The notes below the pieces were generated by a model. It was not told the DNA's origin. It was given only the letters and a program-made list of their open reading frames with translations, and did no database searches. This document shows positions 963 through 63,494 of a DNA stretch of 64,000 bases, one piece after another; within the stretch, counting starts at the first letter, position 1, and every line of letters begins with the position of its first letter. This stretch comes from Octopus sinensis (taxonomy: Eukaryota): positions 38,564,001 to 38,628,000 of the forward strand of contig NC_043012.1 in assembly GCF_006345805.1 (NCBI RefSeq), given 5' to 3'. The position numbers and the translations under genes are program-made.

Positions 963-1025
<63 letters not shown>

Positions 1026-1740
1026 GTATAAAAATACAAACTGGGACAAGAACACAAAACATTTAGGAGACGATACAAAATACACGATGGGACATTCGAA
1101 GTCTTCAATCTTCAGTCAAGAACCGGATCATCCTCGTAATTTCGGTTGATTAATCTTGAGATTGCTCCGATCTGGCCAGCCCCAAAGGAAAATCTAAGCT
1201 AAGCGCATTAGATTCCTTGGAAGAAAGCTTCGAATGTATACAAAACAAGGACGGAAAAACGGACGATGTTACACGAATAAGAATACAAAAATAATACGTA
1301 AAAACAATAATAATGCGTAGAAACAATAATAAAAATAAAATAACAATAACAGGACATCACAAACAGGCGTCTTTCGACTAGACGAATTAAACTAAGCTGG
1401 CGTGTTAGGAATGTGCCTTGGGGCAGAGAGAAAAAATGTTGGTTTTACCGCTACCGCTGCAAAACCCCAAATGGCCAGCAGTCGGTCAGTCAGTCAGTCA
1501 GTCAGAGAAGAGAGTGGAAAAGAGGAACAGATGAATTAAGGAGGGGGAGAAGAGAGAGAAAAAGAGGAACAAGGAATTAAGGAGGAGGAGCAGAGAGAGA
1601 GAGAGAGAGAGAGCGAGAAAAAGAGACAGGGGCAGAGTGAAGTGCAAAGTAAGAAAGCGAAGAAATGTAGGAGAGGGGGGAGAGAGACAGAATCGTACCA
1701 AGTTTAGAGAAATGTGTACATACATATAAGAGAGAGGGTA
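1026..1740 (-). mobile_element. Non-autonomous repeat, copy A of the family carrying a permuted hammerhead-like motif; 3' end abuts a (TA)n array
   Basis: 1030-1165 matches 12745-12870 in inverted orientation and 4730-4860 in the same orientation. Upstream blocks (AGCTGGCGT, ATGTTGGT, GACAGAATC..ACCAAG) are shared with 4687-5350. The 5' boundary is approximate. Confidence 0.7.
1105..1165 (-). ncRNA. Candidate pseudoknotted (strand-permuted) hammerhead-like motif, copy A
   Basis: Minus strand: GCAAU-C-UCAAGA / UCAA-CC-GAA-AUUAC / UCUUGA-CUGAAGA-UUGA. Helix I is 6 bp; helix III is 5 bp with one mismatch. Confidence 0.5.
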
Positions 1741-3102
1741 CATACACCGTATATATATACGCACACATATGTAGACAGATATACTACTTGTCTCTAATAC
1801 ATGACATGTTACTAAACGTATTGGGGCTCAGCATTCCAACCACGTTAAACTGCCATTTTCGTATAATGCATTCTGGAAAATGTCATAAATTTGGATTCAG
1901 GTTTTAACGAAGCAACAGGAACCATAGAGTGGAAACATTCACAGAAAACAGAGTTATTGAAATTCCGATTCTTCATTGATTTTTACCAAACGATTCCTCT
2001 GGGTGTGTGTGTGTGCATATATATATACATTAATATATATATAAATATAAATATATATATATGTATATATGTGTGTGTATGTGAGTGTGCTTGGAAGGTA
2101 AGATTACATTTTAATGTATTGCATATCTGTACATACATTCCAGATTCTATAACCGAATATTATTGCCATTCTACTTTATCGAACTGGTGGTATATTGGTG
2201 TGAAAAAGTACACGTATGTATGTAGATTAAAGATATTTGTCAATGATTCTTGAAATCAATGCGATGCCATTTTAACCGTTGCTGTTGATGAGAGTTTCTG
2301 CCGATTCTCCTGTCAAACCGTTAATCCTCCAAGTCATGCCAGAACGCCATGTTGGTATCGAAGTTTCTCACACATATTGACAGCTCCAACCACGAAAAGA
2401 ACTTTTTTTTAGCTTAAACTCAAAAATAACATAATATACAGTAAAAAACAATAAAACTGATTATAAAAACAAAATATACAAAAATTTTTCACGATATTTT
2501 TATAGATTTTTGTTCTTCATTATATTTCTTGTTTTCATTTTTCTGTCCTTTTTTTTTGTCTATTTCTCAAAGATTTATTGCTATATTAAACATAAATAAA
2601 GCCGAGAAAAATATATTAAAAACAAATAGATAAATAAATATAAATAAGTGTAAAGCAACAGTAATAATAATAATAACAACAACAACAACAACAAGAACAA
2701 GCATGAATAACAGCGATGCCATCAGCTTCAAAACAACAACTTGTGCGTACATTTATTTTTATCATTTTCAGAAAATCGCATTATGGGTGTATTTAATTCC
2801 ATTATTTATTTATTCATGTTTTGCGAAACGTTTATATGCATATATATGTGTACACAAACACCTACCCGCACACACACACACACACGCACACACGCAAGCA
2901 CACACACGCACACACAACACACGTATGTATATACGGAGGGTGTCTGTTTTGTCTTCTTAGCCATCAAAGTTTGTAGGAAACTAAGATACGGCATTAAAAT
3001 GTTATTAGTTACTAACCAATACACTTCATCACCCCACTCCACCCCCTTATACAATTTGTAGTATGACTAACAAAACTCGCTGATCACTAGAACCAAGTGC
3101 AG

Positions 3103-4461: not shown

Positions 4462-4616
4462 ATACAACGGGCTTCTTTCAGTTTCCGTCTACCAGATCCA
4501 CTCACAAGGCTTGGGTCAGCTCGAGATGCACTCGCCCAAGTTGCCACGGGGTGACACTGATCCCGGAACAATGTGGTTGGGAAGCAAGCTTCTTACCACA
4601 CTGACACTGCTACGCC
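4220..4616 (-). mobile_element. Composite tRNA-derived SINE (CORE-like head, internal microsatellite, second domain)
   Basis: Colinear with 9716-10104, 10686-11157 and 53390-53798. Confidence 0.85.
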
Positions 4617-4686
4617 GCTCTCTCTCTCTCTTTTGATATATCTATCTATATATATATATAAGAATGAATGTTTTTATATATAATGA

Positions 4687-5350
4687 ACGTGAAATACAGG
4701 AAGGGACGAACACGGAACACAGACAAATCATTCGAAGCCTTCAATCTTCAGTCAGACACCGAATCATCATAGCAAATTTCGGCTGTTCAATTCTGATATT
4801 TGCTCCAACTCGGCCAGCCCCAAGAAAAAAAAACTAAGCATTAGATTTCTTGGTAGAAGACAGGAATGTGAACGCACAAGACGGATGTGAATACAAGAGA
4901 CGAAAACGAAATTGAAAACAGTAATGAATAAACAAAATATATATAACGGTGGTTGTCATACGACTTTAGACCAAATGAGACAAAAACAACAACAACAACA
5001 TAGCTGGCGTAGAAATAATTACCGTTTCGGTAGCGGGGACACATGTTGGTCGATATACGAAGGCCAACAGAATGGTTTAAGAAGCAGCAGGTCGCAGGAG
5101 AGAGAGAAAGAGAGACAGAGAGAGAGGGAATCAAAGAGGGTGGAAGGCAGGGGACAGAATCAGTGACCAAGAGAAAAGGAGAAAGAAGGGATTAAGGAGG
5201 ATGGGAGGAAGAGAGGGGAAGAATCGGAGGGCGCCAAAAAGTTTGGTGAAGAAGCAATGGCGGGTAGGAAAGACAGTGTGTATAGAAGTCGTGCAGGGTT
5301 TAAAATTGGACAAACAAACGGGGGGGGGGTGCACGTAACGCCGCAATAAT
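4687..5350 (-). mobile_element. Non-autonomous repeat, copy B of the permuted-hammerhead family, flanked by 29-bp direct repeats
   Basis: ATAAGAATGAATGTTTTTA(T/C)ATATAATGA at 4658-4686 and 5351-5379; homology to 1026-1740. Confidence 0.7.
4741..4803 (-). ncRNA. Candidate pseudoknotted (strand-permuted) hammerhead-like motif, copy B (best preserved)
   Basis: Minus strand: GCAAAU-A-UCAGA / CAG-CC-GAA-AUUUGC / UCUGA-CUGAAGA-UUG. Helices I and III are perfect. Confidence 0.55.
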
Positions 5351-5789
5351 ATAAGAATGAATGTTTTTACATATAATGATATATATCAGGTATAAACATT
5401 TTAACTGGCTTCATGTAAGAATTGTGGTGCAATCAGACGTCTTCATTTGGCGGTGCAGTGAAGGTATTAGATCGTCTTGCTGATGATGACGAGGTTACAT
5501 CAATAATGATGTCATTGTTTGTCATTTCAACGATCTGTCGTTGACGATTGTCGAAGTGGTAACGGTGTCGATGCTGATAACATTGATCTTCGTTACGTTA
5601 AAGATATCTCCCGAATATTCTGGTTCTATCCACCTTTCCTTTCCTCTTTGGCCTTGCTTTTCCTCCTCCTTATTGTTCTTTCCTTTTTCTCATCACATCA
5701 CTTGTGCATTTTGTTCTTGAACGAAAATGTGTATTCGGCCCTTCTTTCTTGACGGCTTTCTTCCGTTTCTTTCATTCTTGTTTACACGT

Positions 5790-7796: not shown

Positions 7797-8437
7797 GTCG
7801 TTGGCATCCTTTTTGTCTCGGGAGACAATGCAGTTGCGCATAAAGTAGTCTAGTCCGGCTTTTACATTTCATGTCCTGATACATTTCCTGCTGTGGCAGT
7901 GTAGTCCTATCCTGGACAAACACTCCCTCTGGCAGGTACCGCAAATGTAGCGAAGACTGTTCCTGGCTGGTTGTAGTGTCATAGTCTCTTGTTTACGTCT
8001 CTTCCTTTCTTTCCATTTCTCCTCTCTCTCTCTCTGTCACTCCTTTGTATTTCCTCTTTTACGGTACGTCGCCATTCTCCACGGTTGCCGGCAACTGCCT
8101 CCCAACCGCTAATATTGATGTTGCAGGCCTTCATGTCCCTTTTGCAAACATCCTTGTAACGTAAGTCGGTCTACCCACAGACCTAGTACTCCTAGCAAGC
8201 TCTCCGTAGAGTATGTCCTTGGGGATTCTGCCATCTTTCATACGGCTAACATGCCCAAGCCATCTCATACATCTTTGTGTGAGAAGTGCAAACATGCTTG
8301 GTATTCCTGCTTGCTTGAGGACATCTTTGTTGGGGACATGATTCTGCCATTTGATGCGGAGGATTTTCCGGAGGCAGCGCAGGGGAAAGATGTTTAGGCG
8401 ACGCTCTTGGCGTGTGTATAGCGTCCAAGTCTCACTT

Positions 8438-8440
<3 letters not shown>
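7797..8440 (-). mobile_element. 5'-truncated RTE-clade (BovB-like) LINE: RT C-terminal region plus 3' UTR
   Basis: 'GSETWTL..RQERRLNIF.LRCLRKILRIKWQ..VPN.DVL..AGIPS...L.QR.MRWLGHVSRM.DGRIPKDILYGEL....R.VGRP' is the characteristic RTE post-RT segment. Confidence 0.9.
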
Positions 8441-8491
<51 letters not shown>

Positions 8492-8682
8492 GAAAATGAG
8501 AGGGGAGGAGATAGATAGACAGATAGGTAATGTATGTATATATGAGTGGATATATGTGAAAGGAAGAGAGACAGGCAGACAATCAGACAGAAGAAAGTTT
8601 TTAACTCATAAAAAGCAAATATCAATTTACATAGACGAACAAACATCTTCGTGTGTACATTTGACACGTACACTCTACATTA

Positions 8683-8721: not shown

Positions 8722-9411
8722 GGTCCCGGGTTGATTCGGGGTTAACCACAGTAAATAAGGTACTCAATAATAGTAGAGTAAAATTAATTTATTATATAGA
8801 AGGCTTCTACAGACTAGAACTGTTTCATTCAAGAGAAATCTTCAGGAAGCTAGTTAACAAGAATTGTATTGGCATTTATACATTTAGGCAGGTTTAAAGG
8901 GGTGTTGGTGGGGGACTTTTTGGGGGTAGGCATAGCGCAAAATATCATACTTGGGGGAGTGGTCAAGGAGTCAGTGTTAAATTAGATAGAAGAATAAATA
9001 AAAAAATAAAAAAATAAAAAAATATATAAAAAAAATATATAAAAATATATATAAAAAAAGGGAATAGAGTTTTAGGTAAATAAGGAGATTCTCACTTATA
9101 CCTATGCACATATGTATACACACATATGTGCATAGGTATAGTGAGAATCTCCTTATTTACCTAAAACTCTATTCCCTTTTTTTTATATATTTTTATATAT
9201 TTTTTTTATATATATTTTTTTATTTTTTTATTTTTTTATTTATTCTTCTATCTAATTTAACACTGACTCCTTGACCACTCCCCCAAGTATGATATTTTGC
9301 GCTATGCCTACCCCCAAAAAGTCCCCCACCAACACCCCTTTAAACCTGCCTAAATGTATATGCCAATACAATTCTTGTTAACTAGCTTCCTGTAGAAGCT
9401 CCTTCTATATA

Positions 9412-9715: not shown

Positions 9716-10104
9716 TACTCTTACTCTTTACTCTTTTACTCGTTTCAGTCATTTGACAGCGGCTTTAGTCGAGCAAATCGACCCCGGGACTAATCCTTTG
9801 TAAGCCCATTACTTATTCTATCGGTCTCTTTTGCCGAACCGCTAAGTGACGGGGACGTAAACACACCAGCAATGCTAGGGTGACAAACACAGACACACAA
9901 ACACGCACACACATACATATATATATATATACATATATACGACAGGCTTCTTTCAGATTCCGTCTACCAAATCCACTCACAAGGCATTGGTTGGCCCGGG
10001 GCTATAGCAGAAGACACTTGCCCAAGATGTCACGCAGTGGGACTGAACCCGGAACCATGTGGTTGGTTAGCAAACTACTTACCACACAGCCACTCCTGTG
10101 CCTA
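9716..10104 (-). mobile_element. Composite tRNA-derived SINE, full length
   Basis: Minus-strand head TAGGCACAGGAGTGGCTGTGTGG...GGTTCAGTCCC; CORE-like CTTGGGCAAGTGTCTT; internal (TA/TG)n; (AGTAA[A]AG)n tail. Confidence 0.9.
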
Positions 10105-10987: not shown

Positions 10988-11157
10988 TATACGACGGGCT
11001 TCTTTTCAGTTTCTGTCTACCAAATCCACTCACAAGGCTCTGGTCGGTTGGAGGCTATAGTAGAAGACACATGCCCAAGGTGCAACGCGGTGGGACTGAT
11101 CCCAGAACTATGTGGTCAGTAAGCAACCTACTTACCACCCAGCCACTCCTGCGCCTA
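10686..11157 (-). mobile_element. Composite tRNA-derived SINE, full length
   Basis: Colinear with 9716-10104. Confidence 0.9.
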
Positions 11158-11600: not shown

Positions 11601-11674
11601 TTTTCTTTTTATTTCATCTAGTTTCAGCTCACGAGCTGTGGCCATGCTGGGGCACCACCATTTAAAATAATTAA

Positions 11675-11756
11675 CGCTGCGAACAGGATTCGAACCTGTG
11701 AGGGCATCGCACATTGGATTTCGAGTCCAACGCCTTAACTACTCGGCCATCGCAGC
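11675..11756 (-). tRNA. tRNA-Ser-CGA: tRNA-Ser, anticodon CGA (82 nt, long variable arm); D-loop G18>A, possibly impaired
   Basis: GCTGCGA/TCGCAGC acceptor stem; TTGGA-CTCGAAA-TCCAA anticodon arm; ACAGG-TTCGAAT-CCTGT T arm; GCC/GGC D stem; TTTT terminator a few nt downstream. Confidence 0.9.
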
Positions 11757-12642
11757 ATCATAATAAATCGTAATAAACTGCTCCGCCGGTATTTTATTTT
11801 ACTCAAAGCCAGGAACTTTTCATCCCCCGCCCCCTCGTATTATTCGAAACTCTAGGATAGATCACTCCCAGAAATGATACCTCCATATGCATAATCTGCA
11901 TTTACACAACTGATTAGCCTGAGCGACTGCGTGTGAATATATATATAATATATATATATATATGTATATATATATATTATCTGTGTGTGCACATAAACGT
12001 AATGAAATATCTTCCGAATAGTTCTGGATCTCGTTAGCATTTAAGCATTTTATAATCAATCCTTATTTGTTTTCATTCAGAAATCTACATACTACTACTA
12101 CTACTACTACACACACACACACACAATCGACCTAGTGAAATACATTTATACAAGTGTGTACGTGTGTGTAAGTGTGTATGTGTGTGTGTGTGTGTTTGTG
12201 AGGATTTCTATATTTGTATTGGCTTCTTGTTGTTCGTTGCTCCTGTTTTTAGCCCAACCTGTCATTACCGTGTGTGTCGCTAATTGAAGAACTCATAACC
12301 GATCGACGCAAAATATCATATTCTGTTTTAAATAATCTATTTCCATCATATTTTCTCTGTCTTTTTATACTATTTCTGGGTGAGCTCCACATCCTCACAC
12401 ATTCTCTGTCTCCCTGTCTTTGTTCTCCACGTATATGCGTATGGATGTGTGTGCGTGTATGTGTTTGCGTGTGTGTTAGTGTTTATGTGTGTGTGTGTGT
12501 GTGATATACACTCATAGATCGTCGTCGCTATATATTGATATACATGGCAAATTAAAACTACAAACTACGAAGAAATTGAGAGCAACACAATATCTGGCAT
12601 GATCATGTATCGGTTCAGTGTGTGCATATTTACATCTATCTA

Positions 12643-12870
<228 letters not shown>

Positions 12871-12875
12871 ATAAT

Positions 12876-12907
<32 letters not shown>

Positions 12908-26309: not shown

Positions 26310-27425
26310 TTGAAGGACACATGTGTAAATTATATTTTGACCAGACCCTACTAAATACTGTTTGTCACAGTTGACTAATTAGCAGAATGCAGTCGGAATG
26401 TAAAAGATAATTTGGAAGCTCTCTAAGCAAGAAGGCTTTGTGTGAAACTGGGCAAAACTACTACAGAAATGTAGGAAATGCTGCCGATTCCTTATGGATT
26501 AAATTGTAGGAGCCGAGGATCTGCTTTTCGCTGGCAGTAGAGGTTCAATTACGTGAAAGGGAATGTTAGAAACGATGAGAGGTGTGAGAGGAAGAGGTAC
26601 GTTAGGACATCAGAGCTGACTGAGAAATTATGCAATTGTCTGGACTTCAGACTGTCGTGTATATAGATGGACAACAAGTGTACTGTTGATGTGGAAACTG
26701 TACACAAAATTAGTCATGGAGGCCTGAACCTGCGCAAAATTAGTGCAAAGTTTGTTTGTAGAGTGCTCGGTAACGGACAGAAAGATTGACGCGTGGGCAA
26801 CTGCAGATTCATCATTCCCACCACTCTAAGTGTACACATGTCACTCGTGTCGTTTGACGAAAGCTGTATCTACAGTTATATTCCAGACCTCAAGAGACAG
26901 AGTACCCAACGGAAGCAATACTAGCTCCCCCAGGTCTAAGAAGTCGAGGCAATGAAAATCCACCGTAAAGTTCTTGATAATAGCCATTTTCGACGAGAAG
27001 GGTACCATCTACATCTCGTGGATTTACTCTGGCCAGGCGGTCAAGAAAGAGTTCTTTCAGAAGGTTTTGAGGGACTTTAAGATGATCGTTCATCAAAAAA
27101 GTCCAGAACTCAACTTGAGGTGGTGGTATGAGAATCAAGACAATATACCCGCACACATTTCCATCCTTGTACCCGAGTACTTGTCAGAGATGGGAAATAG
27201 AATTGTTTGTCAACCACCAGCAGTACAGACCTTGCTTCCTGTGACTTGTGATTTTCTTCCTAGATAAAGAACCTCAAGAACTATCGTTTTGTTGGCATTA
27301 AGAAGACGAAGGAGGCTGTAAGTAGAGAGTTGGATACCGTCATTTTGGAGGATTTCCATCGGAGTGGAGCACTACAACAAATGAATTGAAGTTGGAAGAC
27401 CCCACTTTGAAGGAGATCAGAGTTT
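26310..27425 (+). pseudogene. Near full-length mariner (DD34D-type) transposase pseudogene
   Basis: 'CVKLGKTTTEM...RW..RF.....NVRNDERC', 'DESCIYSY.PDLKRQS', 'IAIFDEKG', 'QDNIPAH', ending '..FEGD'; multiple stops and frameshifts. Confidence 0.9.
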
Positions 27426-28614: not shown

Positions 28615-28890
28615 CAATTGCAGCGGTGTCAGGTGTTTATAAGCCATTTAATTTGTCAAAATATTTTCGTCGCTTTGAGACCGCGACCTGTTCCCTGACA
28701 AAATACCGTGCACCACGGACTTTTGTCAGTGAACAGGTCGCGGTCTCAAAGCGGCGAAAATATTTTGACAAATTAAATTTAAATGTTGAAGTGAATCTAA
28801 CGGTTTTGTGTGTTTTAAATGGCTTATGAACACCTTCCACGCTCCAATTGTTTTCATTCCAGTACACGATCTCAGATCAGGTCATCTCCG
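28613..28890 (+). mobile_element. Fold-back PLE-type terminal fragment between (TA)n arrays
   Basis: About 65-bp near-perfect hairpin centred on 28711-28713. The outer arms also match, but the left arm lacks about 45 nt internally and the last about 35 nt. The tail is shared with 62321-62443. Confidence 0.8.
28722..28772 (+). ncRNA. Type I hammerhead variant with a G3-C8 core (GUGAACA)
   Basis: UUUGUCA-GUGAACA-G[g]UCGC-ggucucaaa-GCGGC-GAA-AAUAUU-U-UGACAAA: 7-bp helix I, G10.1-C11.1, palindromic helix III. Confidence 0.65.
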
Positions 28891-32014: not shown

Positions 32015-33625
32015 TTCTGTTTGACTTTTGCTTTATATTTGTACAAGTTGGCTCCAAGTCTCACCCAGAGACCTCAAGAGACAACAGGTTGGAAGTTCAC
32101 GTTGTTGTTATGCCTAGTGTGCCATATATCTGGTTGTTCTTTTTTTTGGTGTTGTACTAGTGGATGTCTAAAAAAAAATGTTTGTTTTAAACCTTGAGAT
32201 TACATAGAAAGTATTTTGCGTAGGATATGAGCCGTTCCCATGAACACTATCTTTTGAATTTCTGCCATTTTCGGGTTTCCTGGTATCTGAGTTAGGTAGC
32301 GATCAGCCCCTTTTGCTATCAGTCCCAGGGCACCTATGACAACAGGTATTGTTTTAGTCTTCAGGTTCCACATTTTGCTGATTTCTCTTTCAAGATCTTT
32401 ATATTTGCTCAGTTTCTGATAGGTCTTGACAGATACGTTTATATCGATTGGGACAGTCATATCAATGAGGAGGCATGTTCTTTGTCTGAAGTCTTTCAAT
32501 ATGATGTCTGGCCTGTTTGCATCTAACTTTCTGTCAGTTTGAATGGGGAAGTTCCAGAGGAGTGAGATGTGGTCATTTTCATGCACTGGAGGTGGTTTGT
32601 GTTCCCACCAGTTTTTTTCATGCGGCAAATCCAGGTTTTTGCAGATTACCCATTGAATATATTGTGCAGCTCTATCGTGCCTGTTGAGATACACTGTAGG
32701 CGCTAGAAGACTGCATTTGGAGACATCGTGATCAATGGTTTCATTTTGTTGTCGACATACACGACATGTGCTACTGCCGTTCTTTAATATGTTGGCCTGG
32801 TAGTTTTTTGTTGGTAGGCATTGATCATGGGCTGCTATGATAAACCCTTCTGTTTCAGATTTTAAGCCAGAGGCCATTAGCCATTGATGGATCAGGGCTT
32901 TGTCAACATCTGCATTATTCGCTCTCTTTGGGTATTTGCCATAGAGAGGGTTTTCTTGCCGTCTATCTCTAATTCCGAAATTTGTTGTATTCGGAATTCA
33001 CTTAGATATTCCTTTGCCTGTTTTGTTACTGAGTATGATGCTTTCTTATTTTCATGTTTTGAGACAAGTTTTAACATCCAGTTCTCCGAGTTTTTCAGGT
33101 AGGTGTCTAGGCCAATTGTAGCAATCTTCATTGTTATTGCCAGTTGTAAAAGTCCACGGCCTCCCTCTTTTCTTGGCAGATAAAGTCTTTCTGTATCTGC
33201 TTTAGGGTGGTGCATTCTATGCTTTGTCAACAGTTTTCGTATTTTCCTGTCAAGATTACATATTTCAGAAATTGACCAGTTAACGATATTGAAACTGTAA
33301 GTCACGACTGGTATGGCTAATGCATTGATCGCTTCGATACTGTTTCTCGCATTCAGCTCTGTCTTGAGTATTGCTCTTACTCTGCGATAACATTCTCTCC
33401 TGATCCTTTCCTTCATCTCTGAATACCTTATTCCGTCTCCTTCAATTACCCCTAGGTACTTGTAGTTCTCCGCTGGGTCTAATTCTTTTATGACATTCTG
33501 CTGGTCAAGGTTAACGTTAGATGTTTCTGTCATTTTTCCTTTGATAAAGGTAGCTTTTGCACATTTATCGAGGCTAAATTGCATTCTGATGTCGTCACTG
33601 AATTGTTTGACAATCGCTAGTAAGC
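32015..33625 (-). mobile_element. 5'-truncated R4/Dong-type non-LTR retrotransposon (RT C-terminus, CCHC knuckle, RLE endonuclease, 3' UTR, (AAT)n tail)
   Basis: 'FSLDKC', 'YKYLGV', 'LYLPRKEGGRGL', 'CRVC....ETIDH....C', 'RHD', 'ANRPDI..KD.....C.LIDMTVP', 'KY.DL..EI..MW', 'PVVIGALG'. A frameshift or deletion near 32930 splits the ORF. Confidence 0.9.
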
Positions 33626-36185: not shown

Positions 36186-36279
36186 TTAGTGGCAGTAATA
36201 ATACCGTCAACACAAGCAGCAACAATGAGAGAAACCGGGGTTAAATAGGTAAATGATTTCAAAGACAATGTTTTTTTTT

Positions 36280-36845
36280 TGCATATGTTGAGGCCTTAGT
36301 CGGATGTCTGGTAGAATTTAAGAATTCCAGTTATTCGGTGACAGAGCAGGGTGCGGATATTGATCAACAGAATACAGCCTTTGGTTAACAGGTATCAGGG
36401 AATACAACTAATATACGACTCAATGAAAGTCTATTCCCTTGCTGGAAATAACAGTTTGTTGTCTGTGTCTTTATTTCACGATTGTTCTGCGTCATAAGTA
36501 ACGATTTCATAAATGAGCAACCATTTTTTATGAATAATTCTTCATAATATGGATGTGCTTTCTGCATATGTTCAGTTCTTAGTTTGACGCCTGGTAAAAT
36601 TTAAGAGCTACAATCATTCGCCGACAGGGCAGAGTGCGGAAATTGATCAAGAGAATACAGCCTTCGATTAGTAAGGATCCAAGAATACAACAATAATACG
36701 ACTCAATGAAGGTCTATCTCTTGCTGGAAATAACAGTTCGTTTTCTGTGTCTTTATTTTACGATTGTACTGCGTTATCAGTAACACTTTCGTAAATGAGC
36801 AACCATTTTTATGAATAATTCTTCATAATATGGATGTGTTTTCTT
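36280..36845. repeat. Diverged two-unit tandem duplication, period 283 bp
   Basis: The units start TGCATATGTT at 36280 and 36563 and are colinear to ATGGATGTG(C/T)TTTCT. Confidence 0.9.
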
Positions 36846-46236: not shown

Positions 46237-46528
46237 CATCATCACATCATCATCATCATCATCATTATTATTATTTTTTTTTCTTCTTTCAAATTTGCTT
46301 CCATTTCTTGCGAGTGTCTTCCCGACTCCTAGGGCAAAGAAACTCATAGTATACATCGGTAGGCCATTACACCAAACTCAATAGTTCGTTAATTTTTATT
46401 TTTTTTTTATTTAAGTTAAATTAAAATACATGAGCAGCATCAACAATTCTCACATCGACAATCTCTTCTCGATGTGAGAATGTTGCTGCTCATGTATTTT
46501 AATTTAACTTTAAAAAAAAAAAAATTTA

Positions 46529-53393: not shown

Positions 53394-53794
53394 TTTTACT
53401 CTTTTACTTATTTCAGTCATTTGACTGTGGTCATGCTGGAGCACCGCCTTTAGTTGAGCAAATCCACCCCAGGACTTATCATTTGTAAGCCTAGTACTTA
53501 ATCTATCGGTTTCTTTTGCCGAACCGCTAAGTTACGGGGACGTAAACACACCTACATCGGTTGTCAAGCGATGTTGGGGGAACAAACACAGACACACAAA
53601 CATACACACACACACACACATATACATACATATATACGACAGGCTTCTTTCAGTTTCCGTCTACCAAATCCACTCACAAGGCCTTGGTCGGCCCGAAGCT
53701 ATAGAAGACACTTACCCAAGGTGCCATGCAGTGAGACTGAACCCGGAACCATGTGGTTGGAAAGCAAGCTACTTACCACACAGCCACTCTTACG

Positions 53795-53990: not shown

Positions 53991-54156
53991 TTTATTTTAT
54001 AGAAGAATCATCAGGAAGCTCATGAGCTTCCTGATGATTCTTTTGAATGAAACAGTTCTAGTCCTGTAGAAGCTCCTTCTATAAAATAAATTAATTTACT
54101 CTGCTATGTATTGAGTACCTTATTTACTGTGGTTAACCCCGACTCAACCCGGGACC

Positions 54157-62949: not shown

Positions 62950-63494
62950 TAAGTGACATTAACTTGCGATGGAAAGCGGATTCTGTACAATAATAAAGAA
63001 TGTTCTTTACAGTGGTTGGAAAAAAATGAAGCACCCAAAACCTTCTTTAAACCTGAGCTCTTCAAACAGAACTTCATGGTGACTGTTTAGTGGTTTATTG
63101 CTGGACTCATCCATTATAACTTCTTAAAACCCAGAAAAACATTACTGCAGAAACATATTGCCATGAAATTGGCAAAATGAATGAAAACCTGCTACTCCTT
63201 TGTCCCAGACTGGTCAACAGAAGAGGGCCAATCATTCTTCATGACAATGCTCGACCACACGTTTCACTAATGACGCTCCAGAAGTTAAGGGAACTTGGCT
63301 ACGAGATTCTTCCCCACTTAGCTTATTCCCCAGACCTTTCCCCTACCGACTACCACTCTTTCAAGCACCTTGATGGTTTCCTGCGAAAGAAGGAGTTCAA
63401 AAAGCAAACAGATGCTGAAGGTGCATTGAAAGAGTTGATCAATTCCAGGACACCAGAGTTTTGTGTTACTGGAATAAAATGTCCGCATTGTTGA
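62950..63494 (+). pseudogene. Mariner transposase catalytic-domain remnant (a different subfamily from 26310)
   Basis: 'LTCDGKRILYNN', 'GPIILHDNARPHV', 'YSPDLSPTDYH.FKHLD.FL'. Confidence 0.9.

What the first reader, a model, noticed from the sequence alone, without database searches (positions are those of the whole stretch)
1093..1236. Second, diverged copy of the permuted hammerhead inside a larger conserved RNA fold
Seen: copy A has GCAAU-C-UCAAGA / UCAA-CC-GAA-AUUAC / UCUUGA-CUGAAGA-UUGA on the minus strand (1165-1105; AUC triplet; one helix III mismatch where copy C keeps AUUGC). The motif and an upstream hairpin (CCAAGGA..UCCUUUGG here, CCAAGAAA..UUUCUUGG in copy B) are enclosed by a 9-bp inverted repeat (1093-1101 / 1228-1236). 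Inference: the conserved unit is an about 140-nt structured RNA domain, not only the catalytic core. A competing stem (CCGAA/UUCGG in copy B, ACCG/CGGU in copy A) could sequester GAA and act as an off state.
Basis: partly seen in the sequence, partly recalled or inferred. Interest (0 to 1): 0.75.

Follow-up and report, generated by a model that had tools for sequence, protein, structure and literature searches.

The report
Permuted hammerhead look-alike in retroelement tail
A repeated mobile-element sequence in what looks like an octopus-type genome carries the three pieces of a hammerhead self-cutting RNA in a shuffled order that was shown in 2023 to work elsewhere. One of the three required helices is nearly missing here, so the copies in this window probably do not cut themselves.

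Summary
The strand order (cleavage-site block, GAAA block, CUGANGA block) is the published 'type-SGC' non-circular hammerhead permutation (Eckert et al. 2023), which was shown to cleave but is known only from metatranscriptomes.

In favour:
- All 11 invariant core bases are identical in copies A and B, while 29% of neighbouring positions differ.
- Stem I keeps pairing through two double compensatory changes.
- Stem III keeps pairing through matched one-base insertions.
- A compact SGC match of this quality is expected 0.001-0.03 times per 64 kb.

Against:
- Stem II is four A-U-rich pairs (-0.4 kcal/mol), set two bases away from GAAA, without G10.1-C11.1, and uses a different register in copy B.
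- Nested folds about 14 kcal/mol more stable sequester the core.
- No Rfam hammerhead model matches.
- Only three copies exist, one of them truncated, and no relatives could be fetched.

The '140-nt unit' is really the best-kept 3' part of a roughly 750-nt interspersed repeat that ends in (TA)n and has a 5'-truncated copy, so it is probably an old retroelement.

Verdict: most likely a structured retroelement 3' domain that carries a decayed or coincidental type-SGC-like motif (0.45). A genuine permuted hammerhead is possible (about 0.3).

The parts
1011..1781 (-). Copy A of a roughly 750-nt interspersed repeat. The 5' part is CT-rich, the 3' domain is structured, and the 3' end runs into a (TA)n(TG)n microsatellite.
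   Evidence: Local alignment of A with B covers 1781-1011 against 5375-4647. nhmmer finds only three copies in the window.
1228..1236 (-). 5' arm of the closing inverted repeat, CAUUCGAAG. It pairs with 1093-1101.
   Evidence: Read directly. Duplex energy is -10.2 kcal/mol. It is part of the minimum-energy fold. In B only CAUUC/GAAUG is kept.
1182..1220 (-). Hairpin P1 (CCAAGGA...UCCUUUGG; in B CCAAGAAA...UUUCUUGG).
   Evidence: One pair changes on both sides between A and B, G-C to A-U.
1160..1165 (-). Block S, first half: stem III 3' strand GCAAU (1165-1161) followed by C17 (1160). The predicted cleavage is between 1160 and 1159.
   Evidence: B has GCAAAU-A at the same place (4803-4797).
1154..1159 (-). 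Block S, second half: stem I 5' strand UCAAGA.
   Evidence: It pairs with 1116-1121 (-4.8 kcal/mol). Two pairs change on both sides in B.
1136..1149 (-). Block G: UCAA (proposed stem II 3' strand, 1149-1146), CC spacer (1145-1144), GAA (1143-1141), and AUUAC (stem III 5' strand, 1140-1136, with the A.C mismatch at 1137).
   Evidence: Stem II is worth -0.4 kcal/mol. Stem III in A is +2.3 kcal/mol, against -2.9 for the AUUGC version in copy C.
1105..1121 (-). Block C: stem I 3' strand UCUUGA (1121-1116), CUGAAGA (1115-1109), and UUGA (proposed stem II 5' strand, 1108-1105).
   Evidence: The 17-mer is identical in copy C and differs at 3 bases in B.
1121..1147 (-). Competing hairpin P3: AACCG 1147-1143 pairs with CGGUU 1125-1121 and sequesters G12.
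   Evidence: It can form in all three copies, with 100% of cells paired. It is in the minimum-energy fold and in the RNAalifold consensus. Energies are -4.2, -6.5 and -1.6 kcal/mol for A, B and C.
1093..1101 (-). 3' arm of the closing inverted repeat, CUUCGAAUG. It overlaps UCGAAU (1099-1094), which could instead pair with AUCCGG (1128-1123) as a bridging helix of the type-SGC kind. That alternative has one C.A mismatch in A and C and is perfect in B.
4647..5375 (-). Copy B of the repeat. Motif: GCAAAU 4803-4798, A17 at 4797, UCAGA 4796-4792, GAAA 4780-4777, AUUUGC 4777-4772, UCUGA 4756-4752, CUGAAGA 4751-4745.
12741..12885 (+). Copy C, 5'-truncated at a (CTAT)n run. It has GAAA 12751-12754, AUUGC 12754-12758, UCUUGA 12773-12778 and CUGAAGA 12779-12785. 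It has no block S.
   Evidence: The sequence upstream of the microsatellite is not homologous to the repeat.

Best explanation
The stretch 1093-1236 is the best-conserved 3' part of an old interspersed repeat of about 750 nt. The window holds two long copies and one 5'-truncated copy. All three end in TA-rich microsatellite, and the sense strand is the minus strand at copy A. It is most likely a non-autonomous retroelement in an octopod-like genome.

Its transcript would fold into a closed multi-hairpin domain. This consists of a closing stem, hairpin P1, and a two-tier hairpin made of stem I with P3 inside it. I infer that this domain serves, or once served, as the structured 3' end that the element's reverse transcriptase or endonuclease machinery recognises.

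Inside the domain, the three hammerhead blocks lie in the order site-GAAA-CUGANGA, which is the type-SGC permutation. They have a complete conserved core and credible stems I and III. Stem II is almost absent and offset from the core, and the nested folds are far more stable. I therefore expect the copies in this window not to self-cleave at a meaningful rate. The hammerhead likeness is either a decayed relic or a coincidence.

Shown: the sequence features, the extent of the repeat, the covariation in stem I and P1, and the energetics. Inferred: retroelement identity, the role in retrotransposition, and the lack of catalysis.
For: - Repeat extent and truncation.
- Helices with changes on both sides: six of 24 conserved helices carry one, against 1.5 expected from column shuffles. 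Five of the six lie in 1220-1116.
- The RNAalifold consensus of A and B is fully nested. It keeps stem I and P1, with 3 pairs changed on both sides. It places G12 in P3 and the GAAG of CUGAAGA in a 3' hairpin.
- Energies. Stems I, II and III in copy A are -4.8, -0.4 and +2.3 kcal/mol, while the nested fold of the 83-nt core is -17.6. In the validated ribozyme SGC-3 the four helices are -2.9, -4.8, -2.9 and -6.6 kcal/mol.
- The stem II register differs between copies. UUGA/UCAA fits A and C, and GGCU/AGCC fits B.
- No hammerhead family of Rfam 15 matches at E<=10 on 1040-1300 or 4700-4900.
- The conserved 27-nt block GACUGAAGAUUGAAGRCUUCGAAUG extends well beyond the hammerhead core.
Against: - The 11 invariant hammerhead core bases show 0 of 11 differences between A and B, against 15 of 52 at other positions in the same span (P about 0.02).
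- Stems I and III abut the core exactly as a hammerhead requires, and both keep pairing despite changes.
- Copy C starts only 6-10 nt downstream of the predicted cut.
- No autonomous partner element, reverse transcriptase binding data or transcript evidence is available. The retrotransposition role is inference only.
Confidence: 0.45

Rival explanations
1. It is a genuine type-SGC (non-circularly permuted) hammerhead ribozyme carried by a retroelement. It is either weakly active today or was active in the master copy. Stems I, II and III form as a double pseudoknot, C17 at 1160 is attacked, and the RNA is cut between 1160 and 1159. That would release a 3' fragment of about 150 nt that still carries the element's 3' end. 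P3 and the closing stem would be inactive alternative folds.
For: - The block order and the short stem I to stem II linker (UUAA, against typically 3 nt) match the published type-SGC architecture, which cleaves in vitro.
- The core shows 0 of 11 changes between A and B.
- Stem I has two pairs changed on both sides. It is the only helix in the 828-column A/B alignment with two or more.
- Stem III is preserved by matched insertions, GCAAU/AUUGC becoming GCAAAU/AUUUGC.
- Chance expectation is 0.0013-0.033 per window.
- Among 115 chance S-G-C matches with stem III in viral contigs, none had a stem I of 6 bp or more.
- In B, a 6-bp helix AUUCGG/UCGAAU encloses block C like the fourth helix of type-SGC ribozymes.
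- Copy C begins 6-10 nt after the predicted cut.
- Naiad Penelope-like elements insert in (TA)n and survive as remnants in Octopus. They lack canonical hammerheads, but some carry core motifs that fit no descriptor (PMC8557442).
Against: - Stem II is 4 A-U-rich pairs (-0.4 kcal/mol), with U10.1-A11.1 in place of G-C and two extra bases before G12. In B it is 3 pairs or uses another register.
- All 583 published type-SGC sequences have a 5-bp GC-rich stem II directly next to CGAAA, and disrupting any of the four helices stopped cleavage.
- Copy A has a stem III mismatch, and its bridging helix has a C.A mismatch.
- The nested folds are about 14 kcal/mol more stable.
- Stem I covariation is equally well explained by the nested hairpin of stem I plus P3.
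- Helices with two compensatory pairs turn up in 10% of column-shuffled alignments.
- Only 2.5 copies are available.
Confidence: 0.3
2. The sequence is neutral, decaying repeat DNA with no RNA function. The helices and hammerhead boxes are chance complementarity in an A/U/G-rich, low-complexity sequence, and they appear three times only because the sequence was copied.
For: - Hundreds of short helices that are 'conserved' between A and B can be drawn in this domain.
- The descriptor without stem II hits 14 places in the window, against 4.9 expected.
- With any block order allowed, a full match is expected 0.39 times per window.
- The folding z-scores are weak.
- The shuffle controls on three sequences are uninformative: 135 of 500 and 260 of 500 shuffles reach the observed value.
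Against: - The 3' domain is 73% identical between A and B, against 59% over the whole element.
- Helices with changes on both sides are enriched fourfold and are concentrated in this domain.
- The core shows 0 of 11 changes.
Confidence: 0.2
3. It is some other known RNA or DNA element, either a C/D-box snoRNA-like RNA (AUGAUGA ... CUGA) or a miniature inverted-repeat transposon bounded by the 9-bp inverted repeat.
For: Weak sub-threshold C/D snoRNA matches on copy B (sR5 at 17.3 bits, E=0.05) and on copy A (sR48, E=4). A 9-bp terminal inverted repeat is present in copy A.
Against: - All scores are far below the gathering thresholds.
- The C and D boxes are only about 12 nt apart, and copy A lacks UGAUGA.
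- Homology between A and B continues on both sides of the inverted repeat, and B lacks it. It therefore does not mark the ends of an inserted element.
Confidence: 0.03

Closest known systems
Type-SGC hammerhead ribozymes (HRIMA-1 motif and type-SGC variants; Eckert, Friedrich, Weinberg and Weinberg, Nucleic Acids Res 2023, PMC10085705)
   Same: - The 5'-to-3' order of the three blocks is the same: site, GAAA, CUGANGA.
- A short linker joins the distal ends of stems I and II.
- All conserved core bases are present.
- Stem III of copies A and C (GCAAU/AUUGC) is identical to that of the validated ribozyme SGC-3. An A/C hybrid aligns to SGC-3 with z=5.2, mainly across the S-G half.
- Copy B has a possible fourth helix enclosing block C.
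   Different: - Published members have a 5-bp GC-rich stem II directly next to CGAAA, with G10.1-C11.1 after one extra U. Here stem II is 3-4 weak pairs with a 2-nt spacer on the GAAA side.
- The bridging helix is imperfect in copies A and C.
- Published members come from plant-litter and soil metatranscriptomes, probably viroid-like RNA circles, and none from DNA of an animal genome.
- No cleavage data exist for this sequence.
Type I hammerheads of Penelope-like elements and animal retrozymes (Cervera and de la Pena 2014; Craig et al. 2021, PMC8557442; PMC11167929)
   Same: - A hammerhead-like motif on the sense strand near the 3' end of a dispersed retroelement-like repeat.
- 5'-truncated copies.
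- Ends in (TA)n.
- A 30-nt direct repeat flanking copy B resembles the 30-40-bp 'tail' of these elements.
- Naiad-clade elements lack canonical hammerheads, but some carry unclassifiable core motifs.
   Different: - Those ribozymes have the normal nested type I order, and Rfam models detect them. This one does not match.
- No Penelope-type reverse transcriptase or GIY-YIG reading frame is in the window.
- No tandem or pseudo-LTR arrangement is seen.
Structured 3' ends of stringent-type LINE/SINE pairs, where a stem-loop is recognised by the partner reverse transcriptase and is followed by a short tandem repeat (my own knowledge, for example eel UnaL2/UnaSINE1)
   Same: A conserved hairpin-rich 3' domain followed by a microsatellite tail, 5'-truncated copies, and conservation that is highest at the 3' end.
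   Different: No partner LINE with the same tail was found. The LINE remnants at 32200-33584 and 8131-8673 share no sequence with it. No tRNA-like head is present.
Discontinuous hammerheads in rodent Clec2 3' UTRs (Martick et al. 2008; my own knowledge)
   Same: Hammerhead blocks that standard descriptors miss because of unusual connectivity.
   Different: Those keep the normal circular order with one very long loop. Here the order is non-circularly permuted, and all three stems cross one another.

Membership tests
Hammerhead ribozyme (any permutation) | CUGANGA box directly between stem I and stem II | tested here: met
   CUGAAGA at 1115-1109 is directly preceded by UCUUGA (stem I). It is identical in all three copies.
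Hammerhead ribozyme (any permutation) | GAAA directly between stem II and stem III, with an A15.1-U16.1 pair | tested here: inconclusive
   GAAA at 1143-1140 abuts stem III, and A1140 pairs with U1161. Two bases (CC, 1145-1144) separate it from the only 4-bp candidate for stem II.
Hammerhead ribozyme (any permutation) | Cleavage site U16.1-H17 (H is not G) as a single base between stems III and I | tested here: met
   U1161-C1160 in A and U4798-A4797 in B.
Hammerhead ribozyme (any permutation) | Stem I that is conserved as a helix | tested here: met
   6 bp in A (-4.8 kcal/mol) and 5 bp in B, with two pairs changed on both sides. A nested hairpin explains this equally well.
Hammerhead ribozyme (any permutation) | Stem III that is conserved as a helix | tested here: inconclusive
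   5 bp with an A.C mismatch in A (+2.3 kcal/mol) and 6-7 perfect pairs in B (-5.4 kcal/mol), maintained by matched one-base insertions. Copy C lacks the partner strand.
Hammerhead ribozyme (any permutation) | Stable stem II closed by G10.1-C11.1 next to the core | tested here: not met
   UUGA/UCAA gives -0.4 kcal/mol with a U-A closing pair and a 2-nt spacer. In B only 3 pairs remain in that register, or GGCU/AGCC pairs after a 5-nt insertion. The register is not conserved.
Type-SGC hammerhead (Eckert et al. 2023) | Block order S-G-C with a short linker from stem I to stem II | tested here: met
   The order is confirmed. The linker is UUAA (4 nt), against typically 3 nt in the family.
Type-SGC hammerhead (Eckert et al. 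2023) | Fourth helix joining the other sides of stems I and II, which is required for cleavage | tested here: inconclusive
   B has AUUCGG/UCGAAU with 6 pairs (-3.7 kcal/mol). A and C have a C.A mismatch (-1.3 kcal/mol), and there the stronger 9-bp closing stem competes for the same strand.
Type-SGC hammerhead (Eckert et al. 2023) | Site-specific self-cleavage that is abolished by mutating the G of CUGA | not testable with these tools
   This needs an in vitro transcription and cleavage assay.
Hammerhead families of Rfam | Match to a curated covariance model | tested here: not met
   No hammerhead match at E<=10 on 1040-1300 or 4700-4900, and none at gathering score in the window. Nested models cannot represent the SGC topology, so this is weak evidence. 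I could not check whether Rfam 15 holds a type-SGC model.
Penelope-like element or its non-autonomous derivative | Pseudo-LTR or tandem structure, a 30-40-bp tail, insertion in (TA)n, and a partner reverse transcriptase plus GIY-YIG reading frame | tested here: inconclusive
   (TA)n ends are seen in A, B and C, and a 30-nt flanking direct repeat is seen in B. No pseudo-LTR and no Penelope-type reading frame are in the window.

The most novel reading that the evidence does not exclude
An animal (octopod) retroelement family carries a non-circularly permuted type-SGC hammerhead ribozyme. It would be the first such ribozyme encoded in a eukaryotic genome. It could also explain the orphan 'hammerhead core' motifs reported in Naiad-type Penelope-like elements that lack canonical hammerheads. 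The copies in this window would be partly decayed descendants of an active master copy.
Probability: 0.25. Interest if true: 0.8.

Novelty: new member of a known kind. Interest (0 to 1): 0.5.

Why it matters
Non-circular permutations of a ribozyme are known from a single 2023 study, and only in environmental RNA of unknown hosts. A DNA-encoded example borne on a mobile element in an animal would matter in three ways:
- It would show that this topology arises and persists in cellular genomes.
- It would give the permuted form a biological setting, namely the processing of retroelement transcripts.
- It would suggest that retroelement clades described as lacking hammerheads should be searched again with permuted descriptors.

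If the motif is instead a coincidence or a relic, the finding is an ordinary, unannotated repeat family with a structured 3' end. It would also be a useful caution. Relaxed three-block hammerhead descriptors produce chance hits at about 0.03-0.4 per 64 kb in this kind of sequence.

Tried and rejected
1. Rfam scans of the whole window and of copies A and B found no hammerhead. They returned only microsatellite-driven miRNA noise, one tRNA, and weak C/D snoRNA-like hits.
2. I looked for family members outside the window.
   - Exact-pattern scans of metagenome, viral and prokaryote genome contigs gave nothing or chance hits in bacterial coding sequence.
   - A chimeric query made of the repeat's spurious reading frames found no protein.
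   - The LINE reverse transcriptase reading frame is not on record, and its best relatives are only about 60% identical.
   - A query translated from the SINE reached one Argonauta hians protein.
   - The two fetched loci, L007 and L008, contain no copy of the repeat.
   - The source genome appears to be absent from the collections, so no family-wide covariation test was possible.
3. No canonical readings (type I or type III) fit. There is no GAAA downstream of CUGAAGA, and UUGAAGRCUUC cannot form an adjacent stem II (read).
4. I tried to rescue stem II with alternative registers. GGCU/AGCC works only in B and needs a 5-nt insertion after A9.
5. The miniature inverted-repeat transposon reading of the 9-bp inverted repeat is rejected, because homology between A and B runs through it.
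6. A second partial copy upstream of the (CTAT)n run at copy C is rejected, because the alignment scores fall within the shuffle range.
7. I did not build a covariance model from the published HRIMA-1 alignment. Its stem I is sequence-conserved and all its helices cross, so the score would not discriminate.
8. The supplementary files of the Naiad paper, which hold the consensus sequences, are not available as text.

Full report
**What is in the sequence**

- GCAAU (1165-1161)
- C (1160)
- UCAAGA (1159-1154)
- UUAA (1153-1150)
- UCAA (1149-1146)
- CC (1145-1144)
- GAA (1143-1141)
- AUUAC (1140-1136)
- a 14-nt linker
- UCUUGA (1121-1116)
- CUGAAGA (1115-1109)
- UUGA (1108-1105)

The whole motif lies between CAUUCGAAG (1236-1228) and CUUCGAAUG (1101-1093). 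An upstream hairpin pairs CCAAGGA (1220-1214) with UCCUUUGG (1189-1182). The 17-mer UCUUGACUGAAGAUUGA recurs at 12773-12789 on the plus strand (copy C, no mismatch) and at 4757-4741 on the minus strand (copy B, 3 mismatches). Shuffles predict 0.18 such matches.

**What the repeat is**

- nhmmer and BLAST find only these three copies in the window.
- A and C are 90% identical from about 1149 to 1010.
- A and B are 78% identical over 1225-1093 by BLAST, and 73% over the 153-column alignment of the domain.
- A and B remain alignable over about 770 nt, 1781-1011 against 5375-4647. Identity over the whole element is 59%.
- All three copies run into TA-rich microsatellite at the 3' end.
- Copy C is 5'-truncated at a (CTAT)n run, and the sequence upstream of that run is unrelated to the repeat.
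- Copy B is flanked by a 30-nt direct repeat at 5376-5349 and 4684-4657.

These are the habits of a retroelement whose sense strand is the strand that carries the motif.

The window itself is eukaryotic and microsatellite-rich. It holds a tRNA-Ser(CGA) gene, LINE and mariner remnants, and SINE copies that are 84-91% identical to a locus of the octopod Argonauta hians. I infer an octopod genome.

**Is the topology meaningful?**

That is the reverse of the circular order shared by types I, II and III, so all three helices cross one another.

This arrangement has been described. Eckert, Friedrich, Weinberg and Weinberg (2023, PMC10085705) named it 'type SGC'. They found 583 examples in metatranscriptomes and showed cleavage at the predicted site. 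They also showed that stems I, II and III, plus a fourth helix joining the far sides of stems I and II, are each required.

The published sequences have three relevant features:
- a linker of about 3 nt between stems I and II
- a 5-bp GC-rich stem II directly next to CGAAA
- one extra U after CUGAUGA

**What fits**

- All 11 invariant core bases are present and identical in A and B. In the same span, 15 of 52 other positions differ (P about 0.02).
- H17 is C in A and A in B.
- Stem I is 6 bp in A (-4.8 kcal/mol) and 5 bp in B. Two of its pairs change on both sides: A-U to G-C, and G-C to A-U.
- Stem I is the only helix in the 828-column A/B alignment with two or more such changes. Column-shuffled alignments produce such a helix in 10% of trials.
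- Stem III keeps pairing through matched one-base insertions, GCAAU/AUUGC becoming GCAAAU/AUUUGC.
- A compact S-G-C match with stem I of at least 5 bp and stem III is expected 0.033 times per window. With stem I of at least 6 bp and stem II of at least 4 bp it is expected 0.0013 times.
- Among 115 chance S-G-C matches with stem III in viral contigs, none had a stem I of 6 bp or more.
- In B, the helix AUUCGG/UCGAAU encloses block C in the same way as the fourth helix of type-SGC ribozymes.
- Copy C begins 6-10 nt downstream of the predicted cut.

**What does not fit**

- Stem II is the problem. UUGA/UCAA is worth -0.4 kcal/mol, is closed by U-A rather than G10.1-C11.1, and sits two bases away from G12.
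- In B that register keeps only 3 pairs. The better alternative there, GGCU/AGCC, needs a 5-nt insertion after A9, and it fails in A.
- A helix that changes register between copies looks like chance complementarity rather than a conserved element.
- Copy A also has the A.C mismatch in stem III (+2.3 kcal/mol) and a C.A mismatch in the bridging helix.
- The three hammerhead stems of copy A sum to about -3 kcal/mol, while the nested fold of the 83-nt core is -17.6. The four helices of the validated ribozyme SGC-3 sum to about -17.
- The RNAalifold consensus of A and B is fully nested. It comprises the closing stem, P1, stem I with the hairpin ACCG/CGGU (P3) inside it, and a GAAG/CUUC hairpin. 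This accounts for the stem I covariation without any hammerhead and buries G12 and part of CUGAAGA.
- P3 can form in all three copies.
- No Rfam hammerhead model matches. Nested models could not capture this topology in any case.
- If any block order is allowed within +-200 nt, a full match is expected 0.39 times per window. Even the strict compact descriptor would give dozens of chance hits in a genome of gigabase size.

**Evidence that the domain is structured**

Six of the 24 helices conserved between A and B carry a pair changed on both sides, against 1.5 expected. Five of these lie between 1220 and 1116. The domain is also better conserved than the rest of the element. This favours a functional RNA structure of some kind at the 3' end of the repeat. 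With two and a half sequences the shuffle controls carry no weight.

**Context from the literature**

- Penelope-like elements carry type I hammerheads near their 3' ends.
- Their Naiad clade inserts in (TA)n, often shows a 30-40-bp 'tail', and survives only as remnants in Octopus.
- Naiads lack canonical hammerheads, yet some carry core motifs that fit no descriptor (PMC8557442; PMC11167929).

The repeat described here shares the (TA)n ends and, in B, a 30-nt flanking repeat. The window holds no Penelope-type reading frame, and I could not obtain reference sequences. The link is a lead, not a result.

**Conclusion**

- Most likely (0.45): a structured 3' domain of an old retroelement, in which a type-SGC-shaped motif is either a relic or a coincidence, and which does not cleave in its present copies.
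- Possible (0.3): a genuine permuted hammerhead, active now or in the master copy.
- Possible (0.2): neutral sequence with chance complementarity.
- Unlikely (0.03): a C/D snoRNA-like RNA or a miniature inverted-repeat transposon.

The decisive data are a genome-wide family alignment and a simple cleavage assay.

Noticed in passing
window 12741-12760 (+), compared with 1149-1160 (-): The 5'-truncated copy C starts to match copy A only 6-10 nt downstream of the predicted hammerhead cleavage site (1160/1159). The exact junction is hidden by a (CTAT)n run. By chance, about 1-3% of truncation points in a 750-nt element would fall this close.
   Followed up: partly
window 5349-5376 and 4657-4684 (-): Copy B is flanked by a direct repeat of about 30 nt, CATTATAT[G/A]TAAAAACATTCATTCTTATAT. 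It is either a long target-site duplication or something like the 30-40-bp 'tail' of Penelope-like elements.
   Followed up: partly
window 4731-4765 (-): In copy B, AUUCGG (4765-4760) pairs with UCGAAU (4736-4731) and encloses the stem I 3' strand, CUGAAGA and UUGA as a loop. This is the position of the fourth 'bridging' helix of type-SGC hammerheads. A and C have a C.A mismatch in this helix.
   Followed up: partly
window 54014-54074 (+) and 8803-8850 (-): A hammerhead-like motif in the normal block order (GCUUC-CUGAUGA-...-GAAA-CAG...CUG-UA-GAAGC) lies in two repeat copies that are 93% identical. In the copy at 54014-54074 it sits next to a 19-bp perfect palindrome. Rfam Hammerhead_3 scores only 13.1 bits (E=4.1), which is chance level.
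   Followed up: partly
window 11674-11757 (-): An intact-looking tRNA-Ser(CGA) gene with a long variable arm (Rfam 64.4 bits; also found by ARAGORN).
   Followed up: yes
window 4467-4525, 9940-10052, 10992-11088, 53637-53730: SINE copies that are 84-91% identical to a locus of the octopod Argonauta hians (L007). This is the only clue to the source organism.
   Followed up: partly
window 32200-33584 (-), 8131-8673 (-), 26974-27267 (+), 63177-63494 (+): Broken reverse transcriptase reading frames of non-LTR retrotransposons, whose best database relatives are about 60% identical, and mariner-type transposase remnants. None shares sequence with the repeat studied here.
   Followed up: partly
window 4745-4794 (-) and 1073-1138 (-): Weak, sub-threshold matches to archaeal C/D-box snoRNA models, caused by AUGAUGA ... 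CUGA in the linker and the CUGAAGA box (sR5 E=0.05 on copy B; sR48 E=4 on copy A). The boxes are too close together for a snoRNA.
   Followed up: yes
window 28646-28778, 46398-46525, 36276-36844: Two long near-perfect palindromes (92% and 85% self-complementary) and a tandem duplication of about 285 bp (84% identical), all seen in the self-comparison of the window.
   Followed up: no
window 1136-1165 (-) and 12750-12759 (+): The stem III sequence (GCAAU/AUUGC) and its neighbours (AGCAAUCU, UCGAAAUUGCU) are identical to those of the validated type-SGC ribozyme SGC-3, which comes from a plant-litter metatranscriptome. An A/C hybrid aligns to SGC-3 with z=5.2 against shuffles. Given the different habitats this is probably convergence.
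   Followed up: partly
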